A stretch of DNA of 63,954 nucleotides, counting the filler, from Octopus bimaculoides (Eukaryota): assembly GCF_001194135.2 (NCBI RefSeq). It is 6 parts of 6 records of this genome, joined end to end, with 100 filler letters (N's around TTAATTAATTAA, not from the genome) between each part and the next. Parts side by side here need not be neighbours in the genome. Positions count along the whole stretch, not along the records: positions 23,997 to 34,793 come from NC_068991.1; 5 more parts are not named here. One strand, written 5' to 3'. Position 1 is the stretch's first letter, and the number at the start of each line of letters is the position of its first letter. The position numbers and the translations under genes are program-made. The notes under the pieces are model-generated. The model saw only the letters and a program-made list of their open reading frames with translations. It searched no databases and had not been told where the DNA came from. Positions 9,034-45,104 of this stretch are shown one piece after another.

Positions 9034-9210
9034 TCATCATCGTTTAACATCTGCCTTCCATGCTAGCATGGGTTGGACGATTTGACTGAGGACTGGTGGA
9101 CCAGAAGGCTGCACCGAGCTCCAATCTGATCTGACAGAGTTTCTACAGCTGGATGCCCTTCCTAATGCCAACCACTCCGAAAGTGTAGTAGGTGCTTTTA
9201 TGTGTCACCT
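9034..9210 (-). mobile_element. RTE lineage A 3'-end fragment
   Basis: Reverse complement of the ggaagggcatccagc...aacccatgctagcatggaa...gttaaacgatgatga tail seen at 10381-10583 and 10900-11045. Confidence 0.8.
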
Positions 9211-9604
9211 TTATTTCAAAACTTTGCTTACAAATATTAAAACATTCATAACTCTTTCTCTTACTCATGTTTAGGGTTTGCAATTATTAAAATTTTGATA
9301 TCAAAAAGACCGATACACAAACTACTGGTTTTCACTTTCGTAACAGTAGCACACCAGCCTAGAGGTCAATCATGATAACAGCATATGACCTCCACATCCT
9401 GTACAGCAATTCTCTTGACTAAAATATAATCAACTATGCAGATAATCTCAAAGACGATAAGGTTGAAATATAGTATTTACATATTTACATGATATAGTTT
9501 CTTTATGATAACTTCATTCCAATATGCTATCATAATATTCTATTTATATGCACGTATACATTTTCCCCTACAAAACTACTTTGGAATATTTTTCAATAAG
9601 TGTA

Positions 9605-9815
9605 AAAGGTAAAGACTTCCTTTGGTCATGAATGACTATGGGATTGCTCCTAGAAAGTTCCTCTCCAATGCACAAGTCCAGGCAAGATTGCTTATGGGAA
9701 CCCAGCAGTCACCCATGCATACTAGCCTTCCCTCTCCACACCACTGATGTTATCCAAGGGAAAGGCAAAGGCCAATACAGCTTGGCACCAGTGATGTTGC
9801 AACTCATTAGGAAGA
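9605..9815 (-). mobile_element. Unclassified SINE-like fragment
   Basis: GC-richer block cttcctttggtcatgaatgactatgggattg...gttgcaactcatt, recognised from memory as a cephalopod SINE body. There is no second full copy in the window. Confidence 0.35.
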
Positions 9816-9879
9816 TAGTTTTTGTGTGTGGCAGATGCACAGGGACAATAAACACCAAAAATGTAGAGACAACAGATTC

Positions 9880-11045
9880 CATCACAATCCAGGAGGAAAA
9901 CTAGTAGTTGATAGCTTACACCACCTACGCAACCAAGTTTGTCGTGAGGGTGGTTGCTCTGAGAGCATAGCTGCTAGAATAAAAATTGCCTGGTCAAAGT
10001 TCAGAAAGCTCCTACCTTTGCTTGCAACAAAGTAAAAGGTAAACTGTATGATGCATGTGTGCGTACTACCATGCTACACAGCAGGGAAACATGGGCCATG
10101 ACTGCTGAGGAGATGTGTAGGCTTGAAAGAAATGAAGCTGGTATGATCCACTGGGTGTGTAATGTCAGTGTGCATACACAGAATGTATGTCCCCTGAGAG
10201 AAAAGTTGGACATAAGAAGCATCAGATGTGGTGTACAAAAGAGACGACTGCGCTACTATGGTCATGTGTTGCGTATGGATGAGCACAGCTGTGTGAAAAA
10301 GTGTCACACCCTAACAGTGGAAGGAGCCTGTGGAAGAGGTAGACCCAGAAAAACATGCAGTGACGTGGTGAAGCATGACCTGACTGGCCTTCGTGCGGGT
10401 GACATGTAAAAGCACCCACTACACTCTCTGAGTGGTTGGCGTTAGGAAGGGCATCCAGCTGTAGAAACTCTGCCAAATTAGATTGGAGCCTGGTGTTGCC
10501 ATCCGGTTTCACCAGTCCTCAGTCAAATCGTCCAACCCATGCTAGCATGGAAAGCAGACGTTAAACGACGATGATGATGATGACAGAGGCAATGGCAAGA
10601 GACTGAAACCTTTGGAAATATGTTGTGCTTGAGAAGACTCGGCAAGTAAAGTGAGATCACAGCTGTGACTGATGCCAGTGTTGCATAACTGGCCCATTTA
10701 AGAGTACTTTTGAAGCACTGGGCAATACGATGTGCTTGAGTAGACCTGTTAAGTCAAGTGAAATCGAAATTGAAACCATAGTCGTGGTCAGTGCTGCCTG
10801 ACTGGCACCTGTGCTGATGGCATGTAAAAAGCACCATCCAAATGTGATCGGTGCCAGTGCCCACTGACTGTCAGTAGCATGTAAAAAGTACCCACTACAC
10901 TCTTGGAGTGGTTGGTGATAGGAAGGGCATCCATCTGTAGAAACCTTGCCAAAACTGATTGCAGTCTGGTGCAGCCTACTGGCTTGCCAGTCTTCAGTCA
11001 AACTGTTCAACCCATGCCAGCATGGAAAGCAGGTGTTAAATAATG
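9880..11045 (+). mobile_element. RTE-clade LINE (lineage A): RT C-terminus, 3'UTR and (GAT)n tail
   Basis: GGCSESIAARIKIAWSKFRKLLPLL, MLHSRETW, RLRYYGHVLRM, GRGRPRKTCSDVVKHDL; the frame resumes after the insertion as TEAMARD*NLWKYVVLEKTR. Confidence 0.9.
10381..10583 (+). mobile_element. 5'-truncated RTE-A 3' end nested in the RTE-A ORF
   Basis: Duplicates the 10870-11045 tail and splits the host ORF between KHDL and TEAMARD. Confidence 0.75.
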
Positions 11046-23996: not shown

Positions 23997-24186
23997 TTGT
24001 ACATAGTGCTGTTCTAGAGAATGTTTAAGAAACCATAAGAAAATTATGTGTTTGTTTTAAAATTTGAGATCACATAGACAGTATTTTACTTAGGATATGG
24101 GCAGTTCCCATGAGCACTATCTTTTGAACTTCAGCCATTTTGGAGTTTCCTGGTATCTGAGCTAGGTAATAATCAGCCCGTTTCGC

Positions 24187-24188
<2 letters not shown>
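23997..24188 (-). mobile_element. R4/Dong-like LINE (lineage b), C-terminal fragment
   Basis: Reverse complement of 27608-27800 (AKRADYYLAQIPGNSKMAEVQKIVLMGTAHIL). Its 5' truncation abuts (AAT)n. Confidence 0.85.
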
Positions 24189-24189
<1 letters not shown>

Positions 24190-24229
<40 letters not shown>

Positions 24230-24450
24230 GAGTGAGAGAGCAGTGCATGCCATCAAAGTGACACTGAAGCCTATTATACCCATCATGACTACCCGTCTGA
24301 TAAGGGTACACCAGGGGTACATGCATCACAACCGTATGTGCACGACATGGTGATCTCATATCAAGATAAACAGCACATGATCTTGCAGGTGGGGCCCAGT
24401 TAAAATTTTCTTCACGTCGAGTAGCCCATCCCGCTCAAAAGGTCCCTAAT
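24190..24450 (-). repeat. Unclassified retroposon 3' end (family E) with (AAT)n tail
   Basis: Reverse complement of 31635-31895 (...gcatgcactgctctctcactc(aat)n). Confidence 0.8.
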
Positions 24451-24479
24451 TCAGGGACCTTTTGAGCGAGACACCTATG

Positions 24480-24663
24480 TTTCCAAAGAGGAATTATCCA
24501 AACACTTCTCTCTCTACCTTTATTTTCCTTTCCAAGTGAAACTTGAAGAAGTTGATCAGGGATTGGCCAACGAGAACAATGTTTGTCTTCAGCCTCTTTA
24601 ATCTCGTCTCCCATCTAACTTATTTCGCCATGGCCACCAGGCATATAAAGACAGCCTTTCTAT
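24480..24663 (-). mobile_element. Tx1/L1-clade LINE, segment 3' of the Ginger insertion
   Basis: Aligns with 32300-32465 and stops at cagcctttctat|CCGG. Confidence 0.85.
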
Positions 24664-24667
24664 CCGG

Positions 24668-26968
24668 GTATAGCGATTTCAGATCACCTCCCATGCATAT
24701 TACCCCCGAGGATAATTTGAAATCGATTTCTAGTTACCCCCTACGATTTCAGATTACCCCCCCACTTAAAATCCTTCCCCAAATGTTCGTCACCGTGATA
24801 GCAAATAGGAGAATCATTATTATGTTTATTATTATCATCATCATTATCATTTTTCTTCTGTAACTTACAAATATTATTACTAAACAGTATAACTAATAAT
24901 AAAAGTTTGTATCAAGGGAGATAATGGGTGAACCCATTAAATGTATGTGTTGATGTTTATTATGCGTGTATGCGTAATGTACATTTGTAAATGAAAGAGA
25001 AAGTAATGTAAATCAAAGAGAAAGTCAGAGCTTCATTTGATTGGAGTTTCCACTCAATTATTTAAAGCTGAAGAAGTTTGAAAGAAGCATATCCAGAATG
25101 GCTACTTTTAGTACACAAGACAAAGCTGACAACATTGATTTGATATTTGATTATATTGTTAACAACAAATATGGACTTCATATGTCCAAAAACGAAAAGG
25201 CAAACCTTCGTAGGATCTCTAAGTATTATGTTGCACGGCGTGGTCAACTCTACTATCGCCACAGAGAAGAGAGAATAAGAAATTCTGAAAATGAATACTT
25301 GACCATTCGCAATCTGGATGAACAGAAGAGTATTATCTCAAGTATTCACATGAGCTGTGGAGATAGTGATACTGCCCGCTGCTTGAGAAGTCATCTTGGT
25401 GTCGTCAGAACCTTAGAGAGGTTTTATTGGAAACTTATGGGCAAAGATATAAAAGAGTTCGTTTTGTCTTGTGATCAGTGTCAAAAAGTGAACTCTGTTT
25501 ACAAAATTAATGTTAGAGAGATTCATACTATTCCTGTGCCAAATGAAGTGATGACCCAAATTGGTGTCGACATCACCAATTTGTCGAAAACAGATGATGG
25601 TTATTGTTGCATTGTTGTTGCAATGGATTGCTTTTCCAAATGACCTGAGGCTCGATCTTTGAAAGATCACACAACGGAAAGGGTAGGAAAGTTTCTCTTT
25701 GAGGATGTTACTTGTCAGCATGGCTGTATAAAAATTCAGATAAATGACTAAGGAAGATAATTCGTAAACAGAGTGTCTGCAGAACTACATAAACTGACAG
25801 GAACACGGCAGCACATAACAAGTCTTTATCACCCTCAAGCAAATGGCCTCATGGAGCGACAGAATCGCACTATAAAAGATACTTTTATCAAATCCCTTGA
25901 GGACCGTGGCAACTGGGTTGAATGCTTACCAGTAGTTCTGTTTGCGTATCGAACAGCCAAACATTCAACACATTTTACGCCGTTTCAAATTTTATACACA
26001 GGCAAAGCTACATTTCCAGTTGAACTACAACACAACCCAACTGCCAAAGATCAGGACAGCTTTGGAAATGATCAATCTATATCCAGAAAAATTGATGTTA
26101 TGACAGCTATTCGAGACAGCATGATTTTTCGAATTGCCTCCAATATTAGAATAGCTCAGAAAACACGAGCAACGGCAGTTCAATATTGGAAATTAAGTTC
26201 TGCTCAAAAACCTAATTCGAGAGGATAGAAAGGGAGGACATTTTATGGAACGCCGCACAGGTCCTTACATTTCAAATAACAATAAAGTACTAGAAAAGAA
26301 AGTAAATGCTATCAACCTCACTAGATATATTGAGCAACCACCAGCAAGTAAAAAACGAAAAGCAAATTACGAAAATCAAGATACCCAAGCGCCAAACTAA
26401 AAAAAAGACGGCTTAATGTATATAAATACACTTCGTTAACAATTTAAAGTGTGTAAATAAATTTCGGTCTGTATATAAAGCACATATCGTTCTTCAAATC
26501 AATCTCTTATCACTACATACTGTCAAATCAACCCAGTCCACTATAAACAACATCCGTCTGCTACATATCAATAGAAAAAAAGTATTCTAATCCAAATCAC
26601 TTTCTCATTAACAAAAGGAAAAATAAAATAACAATAATGTTTTTATTTTAAAAAATTGCAAACACAGAATCTCAGATATTCGACATGTTTTTTTCAGCGC
26701 ATCATAAAATTGTTTAAAAAAATCTAATATTTTTGTCTTATTTTCATATTTAATGATTAGTTTATGATCTTGAATGTAATCCGTGTTTAATGTTATAAAA
26801 ATATCAGGAGTTGTAAGTCTTAGAATTTATTGTTTTAGCAAAATCATCGAGGGGATAATGCGAAGAGTGCGGGGTTAGGGTTAGGGTTGTTACCTCCCCG
26901 GTAATCTGAAATCGATTTCAGATTACCGGAAGGTAGCTTGAGATGAGGGGTAAATTAAAATCTTTACA
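24668..26968 (+). mobile_element. Ginger1-like DNA transposon, full length but decayed
   Basis: Flanks are CCGG (24664-24667) and CCGA (26969-26972). The right end is ...TCTTTACA. Degenerate TIRs of about 70 bp share taat.tgaaatcgatttc.a.ttacc. A single gypsy-type integrase ORF is present, with no RT, gag or LTR. Confidence 0.85.
25098..26400 (+). pseudogene. Ginger1-type transposase (YPYY-like, H2C2, DDE, GPY/F)
   Basis: FDYIVNNKY..KANLRRISKYY..GQLYY; IH..SHLG..CDQC; IGVD..ND*G..MER; YHPQANG; RKGGHFMERRTGPY (26260-26268); ends PPASKKRK..PN*. Three in-frame stops (25641-25750), a frameshift near 26160 and a further stop. Confidence 0.9.
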
Positions 26969-26972
26969 CCGA

Positions 26973-27540
26973 TTAAAGGAAGGCGCCAGGGCGATCTTCC
27001 CGATCGATTCAGTTAACAGCCGGATCCGTCCTACACGTGACAGCAGGTGTTCGACATAAATCTACGAGTCAGCAATGCTTGGGCACTGGACGAGTGCATG
27101 CAGGACCGTCTCGTTTTCCTGCGCGCATTTTAGAATGCTCGGCCTACGTCACTTCAGTGCTTGTATAGTTTACCTCGACCAGGTAAAGCTCCCCAGTAGC
27201 ACTGCCAGGCCAGAGATTTTAGCAAGTTATCCATCGGATCCAGGCCGAAAGTTCTCCGGAAAAGAGCAGCTAACTGATCTTCTTCGACGCCCAAGGTCTC
27301 CCCAAGAACGTCGTTGCACTTTCTCTCCACTAATCTTCTATAGAAACCTAAAGTGGACGTTCCACCTATCGCAGTGTCCAACTGGCTGAGGGCTGTGAGC
27401 GCTTGAACACATTCCATTTTCCAAATACCTCCTCTCGGTCTCTGACTCAGGACTGCAGCTCCGTTAAAGAAACTAATTAGGGAAATACGTGTCTGGCGAA
27501 CGGTGACCAAACCAGTTCACCGTCAAGGGAGCACTGAAGA
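26973..27540 (-). mobile_element. Tx1/L1-clade LINE, segment 5' of the Ginger insertion
   Basis: ORF 27154-27510 (TAIGGTSTLGFYRRLVERKCNDVLGETL...SLAWQCYWGALP) parallels 32471-32856. Confidence 0.88.
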
Positions 27541-27918
27541 TATCCTAACCTCAACGCATGTCTGAAGACGAAAACAATACCTATTGTCATAGGTGCCCTG
27601 GGAATGACAGCGAAACGGGCTGATTACTACCTAGCTCAAATACCAAGAAACCCCAAAATGGCTGAAGTTCAAAAGATAGTGCTCATGGGAACTGCCCATA
27701 TCCTACGTAAAATACTGTCTATGTGATCTCAAATTTCAAAACAAACACATAATTTTCTTATGGTTTCTTAAACATTCACTAAAACAAAACTGTACAAATC
27801 CAAATATATGGTACCCTAGGCATAACACCTACATGAACTTCTAACTTGTTGTCTCTTGAGGTCTCTGGGTGAGACTTGGATCCAACTTGTACAAATGCAA
27901 AACAAAAGTCAAACATAA

Positions 27919-27974
<56 letters not shown>

Positions 27975-27975
27975 T
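27540..27975 (+). mobile_element. R4/Dong-like LINE (lineage b), 3' end with (AAT)n tail
   Basis: KTKTIPIVIGALGMTAKRADYYL...VQKIVLMGTAHILRKILSM*, then a 3'UTR and (AAT)n. Confidence 0.85.
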
Positions 27976-28279
27976 GATGATACTGATAATAATAATAAAC
28001 TCATACAGTAGATACTGCCAAAAAGGGAAGAAAACCCCACAACATGTGCTATAAAAGTCTGATACCCAACAGTTTGCTCTGCACAAGCAACACACAATAC
28101 AAAAACTAATACAACAGAAAACTCAAATCAAACCTCATGACAAAACATAATATTGCCTAAAGGCAAAAAAAAAAAAAAAAAAATGAAGTATATATCTCAC
28201 CAGCAAGTGATACAATAGAAAGTTACTTGAAACTATCAGATGTCGAATAATAATAGTGGTGATGACGATGGTGACGAAC

Positions 28280-30774
28280 GTTACCTTACCTCATTTTATG
28301 AGAGACAAGAGTTTGCGTATAAACTCTGAATGTAACAGCAAAAATGAGGTTGAACCTTTAAGGGAAGGCCTCTCGCTAGGCAGTGGTTCAATAAAGATGC
28401 AGACTGACCACAACTGTTATTCTAAGACAGCATCATCAGACAATAGAGTAAGGATGAGGAAGTGGACCAGCGAAGAAAACAGAATAGTGATGCATGCTAC
28501 TTAGAAAGTGAAACTAAAGGAAGGGGTTATAAAAAACGGATGTTAACATATTGGGTGGAGCAGGGTATGTCTAAAATGACTGAGCAGAGACTAGTAGATC
28601 AAGCTAATGCTATTAGGAGAAGAAAGTGGATGACAGAATTGGAAGTAGAAGAGATCACAAGAGAACTGGAAAAGAAAGATCAGGCAGTGAGAAAGACAAC
28701 AACATAAGAGATACAGGTCAAACCAAAGAACCTAAAGGACAAAATAACAATAGCGCTACCAATAAGGAAGGGGCAACTTGCTCCAGCATTGGAGGTAGAA
28801 GAGATCACAAGAAAACTGGAAAAAGAAAGACCAGGCAGTAAGTAAGACAAACAACAACATATAAGATACGGTTCAAACCAAAGAAGAACCTATAAAAAAT
28901 AATAATAGCTCTACTAGTAAGGAAGGGACAACTGTAACCAGTGATATAAGTGATTTAAGTGAAGAAAATCAGAAAACTTTTAAATGAGATGCAGGAAGTA
29001 ATGAGTAAAGAAGAAAGAAAAAGATTACCAGCATTAAAAGGTACCAAGAGAAGGAAACTGCTAGATACAACTAGGAAAGTAGATTCTGTTATCAGTAGGA
29101 TAGATACTAAAAATATAGGTGGCACTAACTTATTGCTCTATGCCTGATGGGTAGTAGTTACTAGAAGATTAGATATTCCACAAAGAAAGATTAGAAAAGA
29201 GCAGATGTGGAGAAGGAGACTACAAAATAAAGTAAAGACTTTAAGACAAGATCTGGATAGAATAGAAGCCTGGAAACTAAACAAGTTAGGAAACACAAGA
29301 TTTAATACTTCTACTGATAAAAGATACTTATTCAAAGAGAAAGGATTTGGGACAGTCATAGAAGAGTTGAAACAGCGTATCCTAGCAGTAGTAGGTAAGC
29401 TTTCCAGATATAAGAAAAGAACAGATCAGTATCAACAGAATAGATTATTTGAAATAGACCAGAGAAATTTAATAACCAAATAAACAGTGGAGAAGAAAGT
29501 ACTGAAGATAGATGAGAAACCTAATGCAGAAGAAGCTAGAAAGTTCTAGAGTAATATTTGGGATAGGCCAGTCTATCATAATGGAGATGCAGTATGGTTA
29601 AAGAAAGTGATAGAAGAAGTAGTGAGTGAGTAGCAGCCAGCTCAGTATTAAGAAAGGAAAAGGAGGCAAGGAAAAAATTAACCATTTGCTCTACATGGAT
29701 GATCTGAAGCTTTTTAGTAAGAATGAAAAGAGATAGGTTCCTTAATAGAGAAAAACTCTTCGGCAAAGATATAGGCAAGGAATTTGGCATAGATAAGTGT
29801 GAAAAGGGGACAGGTAGTCAACAGTGAAGGCATCTAATTTCCAAATGGTCAGACATTAAAATCACTGAAAGAAGGAGAAACTTATAAGTATCTAGGAGTA
29901 TTAGAATCTGACCGAGTTCATAAGAAGTGTGAGGAAGCTAATGAAGTCGAAATTAAATGGTCCGAATCTAGTGACGATTGTAACTACTTGGGCAGTATCA
30001 TTACTTAGGTAGTCAGCAACGTTTGTAGATTGGACAAAAACTGAATTAGCAAAACTAGACAGAAGAACTAGGAAGGAATTCAATATGAATGGAAGACTCC
30101 ACCCAAGGACAGAAGTAACAAGATTATACTTACTTAGAAAGGAAGGTGAAAGAAGGTTGATATCAGTAGATGACTGCGTGGAGTTAGCTAGAGTAGATAT
30201 AGACTCCTATGTAAGTAATAGTGAAGAAAATTTATTAAGAGCTACTAGAGTCACAGCAAGCCATAGGGAAACCCAAAATCCAAACGAAGTTAAAAACCAG
30301 AAAAAGAACAAAAGTTATCTGACTGGCAAGAGAAGGCTTTGCATGGTAGATTCCCTAAGATAGTTGCAGCAAATAGTAGTAGTGAGACATGGCTATGGTT
30401 GCAGAAAGGAAGGAAGAAAAGAGAGACAGAAAGTGTGTTAGTAGCAGCACAAGATCAAGCATTAAGGACTAATTGGATAAACGCCAAGATAGACAAAAAC
30501 CAAGTAGATTCCCAATGCAGGCTGTGCAAATCAAAGAGGAAAATGTTACTCATATAGTAAGTGAATGTAGATGCTGGTACAGAAAGAATACAATAAAAGA
30601 CAGGACAACCAAGGGAGAATAATCCCCTAGGAGTTATGTAGAAAGCTAGAATTTGACCATGCTGATAAATGGTATGAACATGAACCTAGTAAAGTATTAG
30701 AAAGTAAGAAATATAAGATGTGTGGGACTTTAACATTCAGACTGACAGAATAATAGAAGCTAGAAGGCCTGATT

Positions 30775-30834
<60 letters not shown>

Positions 30835-31185
30835 AAAAAGAGAATAGAAAGTGCCAGATAATTGACTTCGCAATCCCAAATGATGAAAAATTCCAAATGA
30901 AAAGTATAGAAAAAATAGCAAAGTACCAGGATCTGGCCATTGAATTGCAGACTGTGGAAAGTGCGGATAAAATGTATCCCAGTAATTATAGATGCATTTC
31001 CCTAAAGATTTGAACAAATAGAGAGAGGGAAAAGGCATAAAACCCAGTTTAGTACAACTCCAGAAGACAGTATTTTTAGAGTCAGCTAGGATACTTTGAA
31101 GGGTTCTTGGCATCTAAGATTACTTGTTGTAGCCTGATGTTAGGAATTTTTTTCCAACAGTCTAAGTTTCTAACAGTATGTAGAA
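28280..31185 (+). mobile_element. R4/Dong-like RLE LINE (lineage a), near full length with internal RT deletion
   Basis: RKWTSEENRIVM/GYKKRML..W..TEQRLVDQ N-terminus; WRRRL..; INHLLYMDDLKLF (YMDD 29692-29703); LHPR..RLYL.RKEG.R; AAQDQAL; CRLC; WDFNIQTD..RRPDL..IIDFAIP..EKIAKYQDL. Many stops and frameshifts. Confidence 0.92.
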
Positions 31186-31300
31186 GAAGAAGAAGAAGAA
31201 GAAGAAGAAGAAGAAGAAGAAGAAGAAGAAGAAGAAGAAGAAGAAGAAGAAGAAGAAGAAGAAGAAGAAGAAGAAGAAGAACAACAACAACAACAACAAC
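31182..31300. repeat. (GAA)n then (CAA)n microsatellite at the R4a 3' end
   Basis: Directly visible. Confidence 0.95.
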
Positions 31301-31310
31301 NNNNNNNNNN

Positions 31311-31625
31311 TCCTGATGCAGTACTAAAGAGCGGCTTTCATGGCTTCTGATCTTAATTGATTGGAAGTGTTATCATGTACATTGTTTTGTCTTGGTATAA
31401 AAAGATGGGTTACAGCAAATATTCTGCTCAATACCATAGAATTGCTTGTCAGTTATTTGACCTTAACCAGTTGAGAATGTCTCTTGGTGGCTGACGATAT
31501 GCGTATCTCTGATTACGATCAGAAATGGTGTGGGAGCATCATAGCCAGGTGTTCAAAGTAATTCTTTGAGATTTGGATAATTCGCCTTTGGAAACATAGG
31601 TGTTTTGTTCAACATCCTTAAACAA
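31311..31625. repeat. Family F repeat, longer copy
   Basis: Aligns with 21850-22030. Confidence 0.7.
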
Positions 31626-31634
31626 ACCTTATTC

Positions 31635-31864
31635 AGGAACCTTTTGGGAGGGATGGGCTACTCGACCTGGAGATAATTTTAACTGGGCCCCACTTGCAAG
31701 GTCATGGGCTGTTTATCTTGATATGAGATCACCATGTCGCAGACATACGGTTGCGATGTATGTGCCTGGTGTACCCTTATCAAACGGGTAGTCATGATGG
31801 GAATACTGGGCTTCGCATATTTTACCCCAGTGTCACTTAGATGGCATGCACTGCTCTCTCACTC

Positions 31865-31895
<31 letters not shown>
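31635..31895 (+). repeat. Family E retroposon 3' end with (AAT)n tail
   Basis: Reverse complement of 24190-24450. Confidence 0.8.
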
Positions 31896-31896
<1 letters not shown>

Positions 31897-31924
31897 CGAT
31901 GATGATGATGATGATGACGACGAT

Positions 31925-34510
31925 GATTTCTTTATTAACTACAAGAGTTTCCATGAAAAAAAATATAGACAGCACAAGACAAAACAAAAATAACGTGTGT
32001 GTATGTGTGTATGTGTGTGAGTGCGTGTAGTTGTAAGGGTTTTTCGTGTAAACAAGACTAATATAATTTCTAAAAAACTGAGATCAACAATGTGTAATCC
32101 TCAATAGGGAAGAGACATTTGAGGGCTGCTCATGGAAAACCCCCATAAAATCCATGGGTACCTTGACTTTTGGGTCAGGTACCTTTTCTTTTTTTCTGCT
32201 TCCTTTCCTCTTTCCAACTATAGGAGTATGCTCAGGGCAGGCCCGTCCACTCGTACCATTCTCGCCACTTTCATCCACCTTTCGGCAAACTGACTAGAAG
32301 ATAATACTTCCCTCTCTACCCTTACTTTCCTTTTCAAGTGAACCTCGAAGAAGTTCATCAGGGATTGGCCAAAGAGAAAAGTGTTTGTTTTCAGTCCCTT
32401 TAATCTCGTCCACCACACCACTTCTTTCACCATGGTGACCTGGCATATAAAAACAGCCTTTCCTTCTCGGTTAAAAGAAGGCGGATTCAGTTGATAGCCG
32501 GATCCGTCTCACATGCGACAGCAGGTGTTCGACAAAACCCCACAGATAAGCAATGCTCGGGCACTGGACGAGTGCATGCAGGACCGTCTCGTCGTCCTGC
32601 GAGCAGCTCGGACATGCTCGGCTGACGGCACCGCCGTGTCTGTATAGTTTATCTCGAACAGGCGAAGCTCCCCGGTAACACTGCCAGGCCAGAGATTTTT
32701 GGAAACTATACATTGGTCCCGGCCCAAAAGTTCTCCGGAAAAAAGCGACTAGCTTATCTTCGACGTCTAAGGTCTCCCCAAGAACGTCGTCGCATTTTTG
32801 CTCCACTAATTCTCTATAAAAAGCTAAAGTGAACGTTCCACCTATCGCACTGTCCGNNNNNNNNNNNNNNNNNNNNNNNNNNNNNNNNNNNNNNNNNNNN
32901 NNNNNNNNNNNNNNNNNNNNNNNNNNNNNNNNNNNNNNNNNNNNNNNNNNNNNNNNNNNNNNNNNNNNNNNNNNNNNNNNNNNNNNNNNNNNNNNNNNNN
33001 NNNNNNNNNNNNNNNNNNNNNNNNNNNNNNNNNNNNNNNNNNNNNNNNNNNNNNNNNNNNNNNNNNNNNNNNNNNNNNNNNNNNNNNNNNNNNNNNNNNN
33101 NNNNNNNNNNNNNNNNNNNNNNNNNNNNNNNNNNNNNNNNNNNNNNNNNNNNNNNNNNNNNNNNNNNNCGGCATGCCCAGTCCACCACTCAGCGAGTGCT
33201 GACAGCAAATAGATCGCCTGACCATCGGGACGCGTCCCTTCCACAAGAAGCGGAAGAGTATACGTTCCAGCATAATTAGACGGTGGCCAGGACCAGGCAC
33301 GACGGTCAAACGATAGTAGATGACGGACGCGATATACGCGTTAGCCACCTCTGCCCGACCTTTCAGGGATAGCTTTCTCTCGGCCCATTTCTGGGTGAGA
33401 GTAGTCACCTTGTTCGTTACCTCATCCCAGTTTTTGTCCATCTGGAGGTCCGAACCGAACCAGATCCCGAGCAATTTAACTAGTCCGTCCGTCCGTCCGT
33501 TCGTCCGTCCGTCCGTTCATCCGTCCAGCGCCCAACGACGCAGCTGGACGGCATGGACTTGTTTCTCCAAGTGCCGAGCCGCAAGCCTACTGGTTTTTCC
33601 TGGTTAATTGTCGCTCCTGAAACCGCCTCGTAGTCTCTGAGAGTGGTTCCGATTATTTCTATGTGTTTATGATCCGACACCACTACAGTGACCTCATCGA
33701 CATATGCCGACATGCATCTACCATGTCCTAGGTTTCGAGATGCCTTCCAACGCTTCCAGTTTGTGTAGTAGTGGCTCGAGAGTCAGTACGTACAAGAGAG
33801 ACGAGAGGGGACAATCTTGCCAGACGAAGCGCATGATGTTGAACGGCTCTGAGAGGTGACCGTTCACTCTGACCATTGAGCAGATCTTGCTGTGCATTGC
33901 TGCGATCCAGCCTCTAAATACAGGCCGCCAGGTATAGATGGTCGACGCTATCGAAAGCTTTAGACTGAACTAAATTGACCAGGGCCCCACCCATGCCAGG
34001 TCCTTTAGCCACGTTTTCGATGTTGTATTGCATGAGGTGGAGGTTGTCGTGGGTGGATCTTTTCGGGATGGCACATGTCCGTGCCTCCCCTACCAGATCC
34101 CCGACGAAAAACACCAGCCTCGTAGCTAATACCTTGGCCAAAAGTTTGAACTCTGCATTCAGCAGAGTTATGGGCCTAAAGTTGTCAAAACAATCCCCCT
34201 TGTTCAGGTCTTTTCTCAACAACGCCACCGCTACTTGGCTCACAAAACTAGGAATTCTCCCATTCTGTTGTCAGTTGCAGTAAACGTTTGCGAAGAGGTC
34301 ACCGAACAAGTCTGGCATTTAAGCTTAAAGCTCGTAGGGTAGACCATCCAAACCAGGCGATTTACCCCTCGTACAGCTAGCCATTCCGTCCCGTATTTCA
34401 AAGGTTGTTATTGGCCTTTCGCAGCGCTTCACCTCCGTTGCCGAGAGCTGCGGCAACCCGTCGAGGTAGGACGGGAAATCCATCCTGCAACCCGGCTCAC
34501 CTCTGCTTAC
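31925..34510 (-). mobile_element. Tx1/L1-clade LINE: RT, thumb, zf-RVT, 3'UTR (5'-truncated, one gap)
   Basis: NFRPITLLNAEFKLLAKVLATRL; QSKAFDSVDH; SAYVDEVTV; LLGIWFG; LSLKGRAEV; GGLGMP; CPSCSQDDETVLHALVQC; AATAAA at about 31930 on the minus strand. Confidence 0.92.
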
Positions 34511-34529
34511 ACATACATGTATATATGAT

Positions 34530-34792
34530 ACTAGCAGTATAGCCCGGCTTTGCCCGGGATTAAGTTAGGATTATTAAGCTAATCAAGTTCTTTATTTCAA
34601 CCAAACTAAGAAACATCGACGTCAAATTTGGTCGAAATCCGTTGAAATTAGTAAACTTTTGGCTGAAAATGAGTTGCTGACAACTTGATTGGGTAATCTC
34701 ATAAGGAATCGGTTTATCGAGTTTTTCCACTCATCGATTTTATTTTTCGTTTTTGGAGAACTTCAAGCATTCAAAGATCCCATGAGTCCTAA
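34530..34792 (+). mobile_element. Helitron/Helentron-like non-autonomous element, 5' part
   Basis: Starts actagcag..gcccggctttgcccggg and contains caaatttggtcgaaatcc; cut by a gap. Confidence 0.45.
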
Positions 34793-35484
34793 GNNNNNNN
34801 NNNNNNNNNNNNNNNNNNNNNNNNNNNNNNNNNNNNNTTAATTAATTAANNNNNNNNNNNNNNNNNNNNNNNNNNNNNNNNNNNNNNNNNNNNTATATAT
34901 ATATATACATATAGGCACACAAATACCAACTTGTATACATATATACACACATGCGTGCATACATCTGCATACGCGCTTTGATATATATATATATATATAT
35001 ATATAATATGTGTGTTTGTGTGTATGTATATTTATATGTGTGTGAGTGTACGCGTATGTGTGTTCTCGTGTATTTAGAATTCACACGCTATACCGTATAT
35101 GCAGTCACATAAATAGATGTGTTTATAACATGACGATAATTCAGATAGATAAAGAAGCCAGCAAAAGTCAGTTTTTTAATTTATTTTCCCACTACTTCAC
35201 CCGTTTCAACGCATTAACCTCGCAAGTTTTATCTACGTGATGGTCGTTAAGTCTTTCGCTTTTCTCCAGATATTAAACTTATGTGAATTTATGTCAGTAT
35301 TTCTTTTTATTTGCTAAGATTACTTTTTCGATCTCGCACGTTTTTTTTTATGCATAGATTTTATAACGATCATTTTGACAGTAGGAAAATGTTTATCAAG
35401 AATAAAAAGAATACTTTCAAATGATATTATGACTCTTTGTGTTTTTAAAAAAATATTATCGTTGTTATTATTTTTATTCATATA

Positions 35485-43139: not shown

Positions 43140-43415
43140 CATGTGTATATAGATGCATATCAGGGTACAGGACGTTAGAACAATGAACTACAGACAACGG
43201 AACGAACACATAGGAAAACAGAAAGCCACTTGAAATTATTCATCAGCTGCCTCTATTCTAACTCGACGTTTCGAAGATAAGGCAGGACGTACTCTAGAAT
43301 AGTCTCTTCCTGAGTAGTGGATCAACCAACTAAACAGAGGATTCCAAAGTGGCAAACGTAAACCAAGACAGGAAAACTTGGACAGTGAAAACAACATAAA
43401 AAAGCCGTACGGCCA
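43140..43415 (-). mobile_element. Possible Penelope-like terminal (pLTR) fragment
   Basis: Minus strand ctcaggaagag...cttcgaaacgtcgagtta, next to (TA)n, resembles the PLE hammerhead-region motif. The core is degenerate. Confidence 0.3.
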
Positions 43416-43907
43416 ATATATATATATATATATATATATCAATGTGTGTGTTTTACTTCACTTGTATTACATGCGCTACAAGTAGTTCCACATAGATGAC
43501 AATTACGTTCATCAGGCACTGATTATTCTTAGAAATACGCACTTCGTTAGGTTACATTTTTAAACTACTTGGTTTCATAGAATAATCACCGCCTGATCAA
43601 TATACTGGTCATCTAAGTGAAACTATTAATGGCGCGTGTAATGCATGTGGAGTGAAACGCATACATTAATAATGGATTCTCATTAGATGGAGTAGTCTTC
43701 TTGTTGACCTTTTTACGTAGATCACTTTACCATATACGAACGCCTGTTTTCTTCTGTCGAGGGCTTATATGCCCCATTATTAGACTATTTTCCTCAGTCA
43801 TTTGCACGGTGATCGCTATAAGCTTTAAACATAGAAATAAAATAGCATTATTATTATTTACAGAAATGTAAAACTCGACAGCGCTTAACAAAACCATTCG
43901 CGCCGAA

Positions 43908-43989
<82 letters not shown>

Positions 43990-44490
43990 GTGTGTGTGTG
44001 TATGTATGCATATGCCTGTGTCTCTGCGTGAGGTGTGTGTGCGTANNNNNNNNNNGTGTGTATATATATGTGTGTGTGTGTATGTATGCATATGCCTGTG
44101 TCTCTGCGTGCGGTGTGTGTGCGTATTCAATGTTTATTTGCCGATTAGAATGTGTCTAATACAGTATTTTATAGTTACATAAATGGTTGCGTTTATTCAG
44201 CAGAGCTCTGTAGTGGAGAGAGAGAGAGAGGGAGTAGTTTTTCAATGTAATCCACATCACAAGTGTTATTCATGATGGGCGTTTTGTGTTTCACAATTCC
44301 CGCGATACTAATTTCATGAAATTTCTTTTCGTCCGTCTGGATATTTGTCATGGGCCTTCCGTTGTATTATGAAATGTTTCTTTAATCATAGGGCCGTATC
44401 AGCATTAAAATTACGGTAAACAATTAAGAGAAAGGTATGACGAAGGAATATGTCTTTTAGTATGATTATTATTATTATTATTATTATTAT

Positions 44491-44546
<56 letters not shown>

Positions 44547-45104
44547 ATATTCGTGTCTAACTTGTTAAAAGTTCTATGAAGAGAAAATTTTGCGTTGCAA
44601 ATTCTTATGGAGTTATTCCCATAGATCCAGTTATTGTCGAAAATCAAATCTTCAATAAACAACATGAAAAAGCAACTATACAAACAAAGCAAAAAAAAAA
44701 TTATAATAGAAAGGTCTTTCATACCTGAATGAAATTTACAAACAAGAAATGTCCTCTTTGAAAATATCAATTGGTATTACTAATAAAGAAATGTAAATAA
44801 CAACGAAGAAAAGCACCTGGAATCAAAGAATGCCTGAAGAAAAGCTAATCGTTAAATAAACAAAATTCCGTCTAATTTGAAAGCAGAAATCAATGCCAGC
44901 ACCGAGAGCGGTGTTGTAGAATATTTTGGTAAAAAGGCAATGAATGCAACTCGACCGCAACGGAATATAATTTCAAAAACAAGTGCAATATCTGAAGAAC
45001 TGTACAACTTTTTATCAAATCACGAAAAAGCTAAAATATGTCTCGTCCAATTTTTAGTGTATTCTCCAGACTTTCGTGAGATATATTATTTCCAGTTGGT
45101 CATG

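What the first reader, a model, noticed from the sequence alone, without database searches (positions are those of the whole stretch)
24664..26972. Complete Ginger1-like transposon inside a Tx1 LINE, with the empty site preserved in a paralog 6 kb away
Seen: a 2301-bp element encodes only a gypsy-type integrase (YPYY-like block, H2C2, D-D-E, GPY, C-terminal PPASKKRK basic patch). It has degenerate TIRs and is flanked by CCGG/CCGA. Removing it rejoins the Tx1 sequence (cagcctttctat-ccg-attaaaggaagg), matching the uninterrupted paralog cagcctttccttctcggttaaaagaagg near 32455-32482. Known: Ginger1 elements are integrase-only DNA transposons with TG..CA ends and CCGG/CCGT-type 4-bp TSDs, related to the host genes GIN1/GIN2. 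Inference: this is a cephalopod Ginger1 family with boundaries defined to the base. Only about 4 nonsense changes and one frameshift separate it from a reconstructable transposase.
Basis: partly seen in the sequence, partly recalled or inferred. Interest (0 to 1): 0.72.

Follow-up and report, generated by a model that had tools for sequence, protein, structure and literature searches.

The report
Dead Ginger1 DNA transposon in octopus
This is a decayed but complete-ended copy of a Ginger1-type cut-and-paste DNA transposon, which encodes only an integrase-like enzyme, sitting inside an older LINE retrotransposon of an octopus-lineage genome; it is a well-documented example of a known kind of mobile element, not a new kind.

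Summary
A 2301-bp insertion (24668-26968) is flanked by CCGG/CCGA. It interrupts a minus-strand non-LTR retrotransposon just after that element's ORF2 stop codon. A paralogous LINE copy 5.5 kb away has one TCGG at the same place, so the empty site is real.

The only gene is an integrase pseudogene with a YPYY-like block, H2C2, D-D35-E, GPY and a basic patch. No RT, gag or LTR is present.

Its closest protein relatives (56-68% identity) are integrase-only or integrase+OTU proteins, never RT-linked. In an NJ tree it sits in a 99% clade with an OTU-fused integrase.

Seven further copies in Octopus vulgaris, O. sinensis and O. bimaculoides and one in a Logan assembly of unknown origin share the same ends. 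MITE-like relatives with the same termini, from a metagenome, are flanked by CCGG at 28 of 31 ends.

- The left end starts GTATAG, not TG, so that boundary is uncertain by 1 nt.
- The copy also carries in-frame deletions of 6, 9, 12 and 36 bp. The "frameshift" is a 26-bp deletion.
- Typical Ginger1 transposases carry OTU or Ulp1; this family lacks both.
- The Tx1 assignment of the LINE was not tested.

Verdict: a new member of a known kind, of modest interest.

The parts
24664..24667 (.). Left copy of the target-site duplication, CCGG
   Evidence: It aligns with the single TCGG of the paralog at 32467-32470.
24668..24740 (+). Left terminal inverted repeat, about 70 nt and degenerate. It begins GTATAGCG, so it lacks the T of the canonical TGT.
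   Evidence: The same terminus, GTATAGCGATTTCAGAT, is found in L005, L006 and L007.
24674..24758 (.). Cluster of four copies of the 15-mer CGATTTCAGATTACC: 24674-88 (+), 24711-25 (-), 24724-38 (+) and 24744-58 (+). These are the inferred transposase-binding sites.
   Evidence: 6 matches in the window, all in the two ends, against 0.25 expected. The same arrangement is seen in L003-L007 and in the metagenome MITEs.
24810..24914 (+). Copy-specific AT-rich insertion of about 105 bp in the 5' non-coding region
   Evidence: Element positions 147-251 are absent from every other copy that covers this region: L004, L005, L006 and L007.
25098..26400 (+). Integrase-type transposase pseudogene. Its features:
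- YPYY-like block 25170-25256
- H2C2 25404-25541
- D-D35-E at 25569, 25746 and 25854
- GPY 26260-26268
- basic patch PPASKKRK 26338-26361
- natural stop 26398-26400
   Evidence: Relatives are 56-68% identical.
25641..25760 (+). Three premature stops: TGA 25641, TAA 25749 and TAA 25758. The last two flank the second catalytic Asp motif, INDQGREF.
   Evidence: Relatives read W, Q and E at these positions.
26150..26196 (+). A 26-bp deletion at about 26156/26157 causes the frameshift. It is followed by TAA at 26194-26196 in the new frame.
   Evidence: alignment with the O. vulgaris copies.
26401..26897 (+). 3' non-coding region, conserved at DNA level among copies. It holds no OTU or Ulp1 remnant. 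A (TTAGGG)2.5 run at 26873-26890 is found in this copy only.
26898..26968 (-). Right terminal inverted repeat. It includes the perfect 32-nt palindrome CCGGTAATCTGAAATC/GATTTCAGATTACCGG (26898-26929) and ends ..AAATCTTTACA. The reverse complement TGTAAAG fits TGTNR.
   Evidence: (I3). The same end is in L003 (TTGAAATCTTTACA) and L002b (TTGAAATCTTAACA).
26969..26972 (.). Right copy of the target-site duplication, CCGA (one mismatch to the left copy)
24500..24663 (-). 3' UTR end of the interrupted LINE (copy A), left of the insertion
   Evidence: It is 84% identical to the paralog 32303-32462.
26973..27560 (-). Interrupted LINE (copy A), right of the insertion. TTA at 26973-26975 is the reverse complement of the ORF2 stop codon, so the insertion sits directly after the stop.
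32300..34483 (-). Uninterrupted paralogous LINE copy (RVT_1 + zf-RVT), with the empty site TCGG at 32467-32470. An assembly gap lies at 32858-33168.

Best explanation
Window 24668-26968 is an old, inactivated copy of a Ginger1-type cut-and-paste DNA transposon family of octopuses, with both termini present.

Shown:
- It inserted into the 3' UTR of a pre-existing minus-strand non-LTR retrotransposon, directly after the ORF2 stop.
- It duplicated a 4-bp CCGG-type target.
- It carries about 70-nt degenerate inverted ends built from a repeated 15-mer. One copy lies at the tip, and a palindromic pair lies about 45 nt in.
- It encodes a single integrase-like protein and nothing else.
- The family consensus ORF is about 485 aa. 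It ends at the same stop as this copy and has no OTU or Ulp1 domain.

Inferred mechanism, from established knowledge of retroviral-type DDE integrases and from Bao et al. 2010:
- The transposase enters the nucleus through the KKRK patch.
- It binds the 15-mers through its N-terminal YPYY/H2C2 region.
- It multimerises through the GPY/F module into an intasome-like complex.
- It exposes the CA-3'OH ends with the D-D35-E site.
- It joins them 4 bp apart across CCGG, which gives the duplication.

This copy cannot make protein. It has 4 stops, a 26-bp frameshifting deletion and four in-frame deletions. Its left tip lacks the terminal T, so it is a fossil.
For: Empty site and target duplication.

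Inverted ends and 15-mer enrichment.

Domains: H2C2, rve; all catalytic residues aligned. The best solved relative is the Ty3 integrase, matched over its full length (7q5b, E 6e-35).

Relatives: the best hits are 56-68% identical and are integrase-only or integrase+OTU (P0003, P0017, P0021 confirmed by Pfam). None has RT. RT- or chromodomain-bearing gypsy integrases appear only at 25-32% identity.

NJ tree (210 columns, 100 bootstraps): 99% clade with P0003 (OTU), and a 100% clade of 19 Ginger1-like proteins.

Seven more copies in O. vulgaris, O. sinensis and O. bimaculoides and one in an unidentified Logan assembly (L009) are 78-84% identical to this one in BLAST alignments, gaps counted (85-88% over the aligned columns of the 8-copy set, which leaves out L009). 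They have the same left terminus about 330 bp before the ATG, or the same right terminus about 500 bp after the stop.

A second right end is flanked by CCGG (L002). Left flanks elsewhere are TCGG/TCGT and CTCG.

The 7-copy majority consensus gives a nearly open ORF of about 485 aa.

MITE-like elements carry the termini TGTAGCGATTTCAG and TGTAAAGAGTTCAG, which correspond to the window's left and right ends. Of their 31 ends, 28 are flanked by CCGG, and 8 complete elements (7 independent) have CCGG on both sides.
Against: The left terminus is GTATAG, not TGTNR, so a canonical CA-3' end is missing on that side. Only one octopus copy (L005) shows a T there, and its flank then reads ATCG.

Only the window copy has both ends, so the 4-bp duplication in this family rests on one element plus one paralog that is only 82.5% identical. 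A 3-bp duplication (CCG) with the element starting GGTATAG fits equally well in length.

One right flank (L003) is TAAT, not CCGG.

No OTU or Ulp1 domain is present, unlike all but one described Ginger1 family.

The MITE relatives come from an unidentified organism that shares no other repeats with the octopus loci. They support the lineage's target preference, not this family directly.

The reference 'Ginger1' proteins in the tree were recognised by their architecture. They were not taken from Repbase.
Confidence: 0.9

Rival explanations
1. The whole octopus family, this copy included, is an internally deleted non-autonomous derivative of a longer OTU-bearing Ginger1 element. It lost the protease part and was mobilised in trans, so the element is not 'complete' in the autonomous sense.
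For: The closest full-length relative, P0003 (57% identity), continues past the shared QPP..KK(R/Q)K patch into a 250-aa OTU region. Bao et al. 2010 could not decide the same question for the single domain-less Ginger1-1_BF copy.
Against: All copies that cover the 3' part share the same stop codon and the same roughly 470-bp 3' region at 78-82% identity: the window copy, the L002 pair (one insertion later duplicated), L003, L005, L006 and L007. Their flanks show that at least five are separate insertions. The consensus ORF closes at that stop. tblastn finds no OTU trace in the window element or in the O. vulgaris locus L002, the only two sequences searched. No OTU-bearing cephalopod protein turned up in two database searches.
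Confidence: 0.15
2. It is a stray fragment of a Ty3/gypsy LTR retrotransposon: the integrase end of pol captured or left behind after deletion.
For: The protein is gypsy-integrase-like throughout, and its best solved match is Ty3. Databases auto-name some relatives 'RNA-directed DNA polymerase'.
Against: The paralog's empty site shows that the mobile unit is 2.3 kb with inverted, not direct, terminal repeats. No RT, RNase H, gag or LTR is present here or in the other copies. The protein starts with its own ATG about 100 aa upstream of the zinc finger. The nearest relatives are fused to OTU, not to RT.
Confidence: 0.02
3. It is a decayed copy of a domesticated integrase-derived host gene of the GIN1 or Imagin type, not a transposon.
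For: Ginger1-derived host genes exist in vertebrates and in malacostracans (PMC2836005, PMC12863088). Crustacean proteins are among the close hits.
Against: The family is multi-copy, at unrelated loci in three Octopus species. It has inverted ends, a target duplication and an empty site. All copies are broken and lie about 10-15% from their consensus.
Confidence: 0.01

Closest known systems
Ginger1 DNA transposons (Bao, Kapitonov & Jurka 2010; e.g. Ginger1-1_AC of Aplysia californica and Ginger1-1..12_HM of Hydra)
   Same: Shared features: a single integrase-like transposase with a YPYY block, H2C2, DDE and GPY/F; terminal inverted repeats within the 40-270 bp range; a 4-bp CCGG-type target duplication; a TGTNR terminus (right end here, both ends in the MITE relatives); and a molluscan host already on record (Aplysia).
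   Different: This family has no C-terminal OTU or Ulp1 protease domain. Its ORF is about 485 aa in the consensus, at the bottom of the 500-800 aa range. At 2.2-2.3 kb it is shorter than the described 2.6-7 kb. It has no intron. Its left terminus starts GTATAG.
Ginger1-1_BF (Branchiostoma floridae)
   Same: It is the one described Ginger1 family whose transposase lacks the extra C-terminal domain (PMC2836005).
   Different: It is known from a single autonomous copy, so a private deletion could not be excluded. Here the domain-less structure is shared by several independent copies in three Octopus species.
Integrase+OTU proteins P0003 (Tara Oceans metagenome contig), P0017 and P0021, and the krill and shrimp proteins P0002 and P0010
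   Same: P0003 and P0002 are 56-57% identical over the integrase. P0010, P0017 and P0021 are 42% identical. P0003, P0002 and P0010 fall in the same 99% bootstrap clade as the window sequence. P0003 also has the matching PP..KK basic patch after the GPY module.
   Different: P0003, P0017 and P0021 carry an OTU protease. Their termini could not be found on the short contigs.
Ty3/gypsy (Metaviridae) integrase, e.g. the Ty3 intasome 7q5b
   Same: Same domain order, and full-length profile similarity (E 6e-35).
   Different: The Ty3 integrase is part of a gag-pol polyprotein between LTRs and integrates a cDNA. Here the integrase is a stand-alone gene between inverted repeats.
GIN1/GIN2 (vertebrates) and Imagin (malacostracans), host genes derived from Ginger1
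   Same: Same ancestral protein type.
   Different: Those are single-copy, intact genes without inverted repeats. This is a multi-copy, decayed element with ends and a target duplication. The relationship to GIN1/GIN2 was not tested here.

Membership tests
Ginger1 DNA transposon | Transposase with an H2C2 zinc finger and a DDE (D,D35E) integrase core | tested here: met
   Pfam Integrase_H2C2 (E 1.9e-9) and rve (E 1.3e-7, 32.3 bits against a 32.6-bit curated cut-off). D158, D217 and E253 fall on the alignment's invariant Asp/Glu columns.
Ginger1 DNA transposon | GPY/F motif after the catalytic core | tested here: met
   RRTGPY at 26251-26268 aligns with the GPY/GPF of all relatives. The 12 codons after it are deleted in this copy.
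Ginger1 DNA transposon | YPYY motif (Y/F-P-Y/F-Y/F block of about 40 aa) upstream of the zinc finger | tested here: met
   The block KY(G)LHM..KNEKANLRR..GQLYY aligns with the KYP..FRR..G.LFY of relatives. The P is missing in this copy but present in the family consensus (KYGPHM).
Ginger1 DNA transposon | C-terminal OTU or Ulp1 protease domain (all described families except Ginger1-1_BF) | tested here: not met
   The ORF ends 14 codons after the basic patch. tblastn with three OTU tails finds nothing in the window element or in locus L002. The consensus of 7 copies ends at the same stop. Per PMC2836005 this feature is usual but not universal.
Ginger1 DNA transposon | Terminal inverted repeats of about 40-270 bp | tested here: met
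   The ends are about 70 nt and degenerate, with a 27-nt core that is 89% matched at the same offset from each tip. The related MITEs have inverted repeats of about 125 bp.
Ginger1 DNA transposon | 4-bp target-site duplication, CCGG (75%) or CCGT/ACGG (24%) | tested here: met
   CCGG and CCGA flank the window element, and the paralog has one TCGG. The right flank in L002 is CCGG. MITE relatives have CCGG at 28 of 31 ends, the others being CTGG, CAGG and GAAT. Caveat: the other old octopus copies show TCGG/TCGT, CTCG, CTTG and one TAAT.
Ginger1 DNA transposon | Termini follow TGTNR ... YNACA | tested here: inconclusive
   The right end is ..CTTTACA, which is TGTAA on the reverse strand. The left end is GTATAG, without the T, in the window, L006, L007 and L009. 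Only L005 reads TGTATAG. MITE relatives have TGTAG and TGTAA at both ends.
Ginger1 DNA transposon | No reverse transcriptase, RNase H, gag or LTRs in the mobile unit | tested here: met
   The empty site limits the unit to 2301 bp. Pfam finds only integrase domains. The other copies have the same end-to-ORF distances.
Ginger1 DNA transposon | Transposase clusters with Ginger1 transposases rather than with LTR-retrotransposon integrases | tested here: met
   NJ tree: 99% clade with OTU-fused P0003, and a 100% clade of 19 integrase(+OTU) proteins. That clade excludes all integrases with RT or chromodomains. Limits: the references were recognised by architecture, Repbase Ginger1 and GIN1/GIN2 were not available, and the method was distance-based.
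Ginger2/TDD | Lacks GPY/F and YPYY; AT-rich target RTATAY | tested here: not met
   GPY and the YPYY block are present, and the target is CCGG-type.
Ty3/gypsy LTR retrotransposon | Integrase as the C-terminal part of pol, with gag-pol between direct long terminal repeats | tested here: not met
   The ends are inverted, not direct. No RT or gag is present. The unit is 2.3 kb, as defined by the empty site.
L1-Tx1 LINE (the host element) | Non-LTR retrotransposon ORF2 with RT and a C-terminal zinc-binding domain | tested here: met
   RVT_1 (E 2.9e-16) and zf-RVT (E 6.4e-9) on the minus-strand ORFs of the paralog.
L1-Tx1 LINE (the host element) | Placement in the Tx1 clade rather than L1 proper | not tested
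   No reference set was available. L1-Tx1 LINEs are reported as abundant in octopus (PMC13282606, PMC8967140), which makes the assignment plausible but is not a test.

The most novel reading that the evidence does not exclude
This may be a Ginger1 lineage that transposes with the integrase module alone, without an OTU or Ulp1 protease. Its end-recognition code would be a 15-mer arranged as one tip copy plus a palindromic pair. That code is conserved between octopuses and an unrelated, unidentified organism that carries hundreds-of-bp MITE derivatives. The closest proteins are in krill and in ocean plankton metagenomes. Together this would point to horizontal spread among marine invertebrates and to the protease being dispensable for transposition.
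Probability: 0.15. Interest if true: 0.5.

Novelty: new member of a known kind. Interest (0 to 1): 0.3.

Why it matters
It documents a Ginger1 family in cephalopods with a direct empty-site proof of the target duplication, which is rarely available for this small superfamily.

It identifies a candidate transposase-binding 15-mer.

It shows that the protease-less architecture, so far known from one lancelet copy, is a stable family trait.

It offers a consensus from which activity could be tested.

For genome annotation, it flags several Octopus gene models (for example P0018, P0050, P0054, P0061, P0065 and P0075) as transposon pseudogene fragments.

It does not change what is known about how such elements work.

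Tried and rejected
- Termini on L001, the Tara contig with intact P0003. I looked for TIR+CCGG pairs and found none. The only CCGG lies inside the gene, and the inverted repeats are TA-rich low complexity.
- A TGTAA..TTACA inverted pair in L008 (265/4441) has non-matching flanks, ACTG and TATT. I treated it as chance.
- OTU remnants in the 3' region: none.
- Ulp1 in the long C-terminal extensions of P0007, P0008 and P0016. Pfam finds nothing at E<=0.01, so I call them only 'C-terminal extension'.
- Both ends in the other octopus copies. L002 a and b are one 5'-truncated insertion that was later duplicated segmentally (96% identical, same upstream SINE). L003 lacks the left end. L004-L007 and L009 lack the right end. 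So no second complete copy was available.
- More LINE paralogs to sharpen the empty site: none in the fetched loci.
- Literature: no paper in the library mentions Ginger1 in Octopus. The two 'Ginger' hits in cephalopod papers are a gene-prediction tool and an author name.
- ORFs at 28250-31010: no Pfam family. No tRNA genes in the piece.
- I ran no further search on the Tx1 question, because it does not bear on the finding.
Full report
**Observation**

The piece 23997-34793 was read directly.
- A 2301-bp segment, 24668-26968, is bounded by CCGG (24664-24667) and CCGA (26969-26972).
- To its left and right lies one repeat on the minus strand. A second copy of that repeat lies at about 32300-34483.
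- I removed the segment and one tetramer and aligned the joined flanks to 32290-32858. This gives 82.5% identity over 561 bp with no break at the junction. There ..CAGCCTTTCTATC-CGGTTAAAGGAAGGCG.. aligns with ..CAGCCTTTCCTTCTCGGTTAAAAGAAGGCG...
- The paralog has a single TCGG (32467-32470) where the window copy has the two tetramers. This is a true empty site, and the tetramer is a target duplication rather than part of the element.
- The TTA that follows (26973-26975 and 32471-32473) is the reverse complement of the ORF2 stop codon of the host element. The insertion therefore sits at the very start of that element's 3' UTR.
- The host element is a non-LTR retrotransposon: RVT_1 (E 2.9e-16) and zf-RVT (E 6.4e-9). 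I did not test whether it belongs to the Tx1 clade. L1-Tx1 LINEs are reported as common in octopus genomes (PMC13282606, PMC8967140).

**The gene**

One reading frame runs from ATG 25098.
- It is interrupted by TGA 25641, TAA 25749 and TAA 25758. It shifts frame near 26157, meets TAA 26194, and ends at TAA 26398-26400.
- Read through, it gives 434 aa with Pfam Integrase_H2C2 and rve and nothing else. The rve match scores 32.3 bits, just under Pfam's 32.6-bit curated cut-off.
- Aligned with relatives, it shows:
  - the N-terminal block KY-G-L-HM..KNEKANLRR..GQLYY, the YPYY block of Bao et al.
  - the H..H..C-x2-C finger
  - D158, D217 and E253, with 35 residues between the second Asp and the Glu
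  - RTGPY
  - a PPASKKRK patch, which also exists in the closest full-length relative (QPPLSPGKKQK)
- The best solved structure by profile is the Ty3 integrase within the Ty3 intasome entry 7q5b (E 6e-35, full-length match), followed by PFV integrase.

**The ends**

- The tips are degenerate inverted repeats of about 70 nt. The strongest part is a 27-nt core, 89% matched, that lies 45 nt from the left tip and 43 nt from the right tip. Its score is 35, against 14.1 +/- 3.5 for the left end against random 100-mers of the piece.
- The ends are built from a 15-mer, CGATTTCAGATTACC. Four copies lie in the left end and two in the right end. The two on the right form a perfect 32-nt palindrome. Only 0.25 matches are expected by chance in the window.
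- The right tip, ..AAATCTTTACA, has the canonical CA; its reverse complement is TGTAA, which fits TGTNR.
- The left tip reads GTATAGCG, without the leading T.

**Relatives**

A search of 5.8 billion proteins gave 37 hits. A profile search gave 81.
- The best hits are 56-68% identical. They are integrase-only fragments or integrase fused to an OTU protease: P0003 (616 aa), P0017 and P0021, all confirmed by Pfam. P0015, P0025 and P0026 carry the GDGNC OTU motif.
- None has reverse transcriptase. Proteins with RT, RNase H or chromodomains appear only at 25-32% identity.
- In an NJ tree of the zinc finger plus core (210 columns, 100 bootstraps) the window sequence falls in a 99% clade with P0003 (OTU), P0001, a krill protein and a shrimp protein. 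That clade lies inside a 100% clade of 19 such proteins, which excludes all the RT- and chromodomain-bearing integrases.
- This is the architecture and position that Bao, Kapitonov and Jurka (2010, PMC2836005) defined as Ginger1.

**Other copies of the same family**

Gene models from Octopus vulgaris, O. sinensis and O. bimaculoides (P0018, P0050, P0054, P0061, P0065, P0075) and one Logan contig turned out to be fragments of this family. I fetched their loci as L002-L007 and L009.
- They are 78-84% identical to the window copy in BLAST alignments, gaps counted. Identity is 85-88% over the aligned columns of the 8-copy alignment, which leaves out L009. They lie about 10-15% from a majority consensus.
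- L005 (O. bimaculoides) and L006 (O. vulgaris) share about 60 bp of flank and are 91% identical. They are probably one orthologous insertion that predates the split of those species.
- L002 holds two copies that are 96% identical and have the same 5' truncation. This is one insertion that was later duplicated.
- Four copies (L004-L007) carry the left end about 330 bp before the ATG. L009 also carries it, but there an inserted stretch of about 220 bp separates it from the ORF. Two copies (L002b, L003) carry the right end about 500 bp after the stop. There is therefore no room for gag or pol.
- The right flank of L002b is CCGG. Left flanks are TCGG/TCGT (L006/L005), CTCG (L007) and CTTG (L009). 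One right flank is TAAT (L003).
- Only the window copy keeps both ends.

**What this copy has lost**

Against the O. vulgaris copies, the window copy has:
- in-frame deletions of 6 and 9 bp, at about 25270 and 25297
- an in-frame deletion of 12 bp at about 25412, inside the zinc-finger spacer
- an in-frame deletion of 36 bp, removing the 12 codons after GPY
- a 26-bp deletion at 26156/26157, which is the 'frameshift'
- an AT-rich insertion of about 105 bp at 24810-24914 that the four other copies covering that region (L004-L007) lack

The copy is nevertheless further from a working gene than that count suggests.

A simple majority consensus of seven copies (2182 bp) gives an almost open ORF of about 485 aa. 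It has one alignment-induced shift, restores W, Q and E at the stop positions, restores the P of the YPYY block, and ends at the same stop.

**No protease domain**

- tblastn with the OTU tails of P0003, P0017 and P0021 finds nothing in the window element or in the O. vulgaris locus L002.
- The 3' non-coding region is shared by the copies at the same identity as the coding part.
- The integrase-only structure is therefore a trait of this family. Among described Ginger1 families only Ginger1-1_BF lacks the extra domain, and there a private deletion could not be excluded.
- I cannot exclude that the whole octopus family descends from a deletion derivative that was moved in trans. I rate this at about 0.15.

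**MITE-like relatives**

I scanned JGI metagenome contigs for the palindromic core GGTAATYTGAAATCGATTTCA. This returned 25 contigs, 24 of them from one sample, Ga0081606.
- They contain no integrase. They share no SINE or LINE with the octopus loci, so they come from another, unidentified organism.
- They hold elements of 0.72-0.99 kb. Their tips, TGTAGCGATTTCAGATTACC and TGTAAAGAGTTCAGATTACC, correspond to the left and right tips of the window element. Their sub-terminal 15-mer arrangement is also the same.
- Of 31 tips, 28 are preceded by CCGG. The others are CTGG, CAGG and GAAT.
- Eight complete elements, seven of them independent, have CCGG on both sides.
- Together with the empty site in the window, this shows that this lineage duplicates CCGG, as Ginger1 does.
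- It also shows what the canonical left tip looks like (CCGG|TGTAGCG). That makes the octopus left tip (CCGG|GTATAGCG) a departure: a missing T plus a TA repeat.
- Two readings of the window's left boundary fit equally in length. Either the element starts GTATAG with a 4-bp duplication (CCGG/CCGA), or it starts GGTATAG with a 3-bp duplication (CCG). The 4-bp reading matches the family rule, and I prefer it.

**Mechanism**

Shown: a 2.3-kb unit with inverted ends and one integrase gene inserted into a LINE and duplicated a CCGG-type tetramer. The family multiplied in the octopus lineage before the O. bimaculoides/O. vulgaris split and is now decayed.

Inferred, from what is known of retroviral-type integrases and Ginger1:
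- The protein binds the 15-mers and assembles an intasome-like multimer through the GPY/F module.
- It cuts to leave CA-3'OH ends and joins them 4 bp apart across CCGG.
- The KKRK patch probably serves nuclear import.

This copy is a fossil.

**Novelty**

- Ginger1 is a described superfamily with a mollusc (Aplysia) among its first hosts. A mollusc-wide survey counted 98 Ginger elements (PMC10294476).
- I found no paper that describes Ginger1 in Octopus.
- This is a new, well-delimited member of a known kind. Two modestly interesting traits are the absent protease domain and a clear candidate binding motif shared with MITEs in another organism.

Noticed in passing
L010-L034 (JGI metagenome contigs, 24 of 25 from Ga0081606), e.g. 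L016:678-1590, L020:1416-2400, L014:3918-4637: A family of 0.72-0.99 kb MITE-like elements. Their tips (TGTAGCGATTTCAG.. and TGTAAAGAGTTCAG..) and sub-terminal 15-mer palindromes match the window element's ends. Of 31 tips, 28 are flanked by CCGG. The contigs hold no integrase and share no octopus SINE or LINE, so the host organism is unknown.
   Followed up: partly
window 26873-26890: A telomere-type repeat, (TTAGGG)2.5, lies just inside the right inverted repeat. It is present only in the window copy and is absent from the O. vulgaris and O. sinensis copies.
   Followed up: partly
L002 (O. vulgaris OX597819.1) 9163-10723 and 43205-45046: The annotated O. vulgaris protein P0018 is a chimeric gene model. 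It is spliced from two Ginger1 pseudogene copies 34 kb apart, which are themselves a 96% identical segmental duplicate. P0050, P0054, P0061, P0065 and P0075 are likewise fragments of this transposon annotated as genes.
   Followed up: partly
L005:5333 (O. bimaculoides) and L006:5660 (O. vulgaris): The same insertion with about 60 bp of matching left flank is present in both species, and the copies are 91% identical. The family was therefore active before these species split.
   Followed up: partly
window 24185-24503, 27562-27998, 31429-31893: Three copies of a SINE-like repeat next to (ATT)n/(AAT)n runs. They are 81-87% identical to a repeat at L002:11806-12729 of O. vulgaris. This ties the window to the octopus lineage. 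ARAGORN finds no tRNA gene in them.
   Followed up: partly
window 28250-31010 (+ strand): A run of short ORFs rich in K, R and E, which looks like another decayed repeat. It contains a long (GTC)n-type run at about 30770-30830. No Pfam family matches.
   Followed up: partly
window 31170-31300 and 32858-33168: A long simple repeat that reads poly-Arg and runs into a stretch of N. A second assembly gap of about 310 N lies inside the paralogous LINE, so part of its ORF2 is missing from the assembly.
   Followed up: no
window 33483-33530: A (GTCC/GTCCGTTC)n microsatellite embedded in the RT region of the paralogous LINE copy.
   Followed up: no
proteins P0002 (Meganyctiphanes norvegica), P0010/P0012 (Palaemon carinicauda), P0001/P0003 (Tara Oceans contigs), P0004 (JGI Ga0316161): The closest proteins to the octopus transposase (56-68% identity for P0001-P0004, 42-50% for the shrimp proteins) come from krill, a shrimp and plankton metagenomes, not from other molluscs. 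This could reflect database sampling or horizontal transfer.
   Followed up: no
window 26990-27010: A 20-bp insertion (CCAGGGCGATCTTCCCGATC) in LINE copy A relative to the paralog, 18 bp to the right of the Ginger1 insertion site.
   Followed up: no
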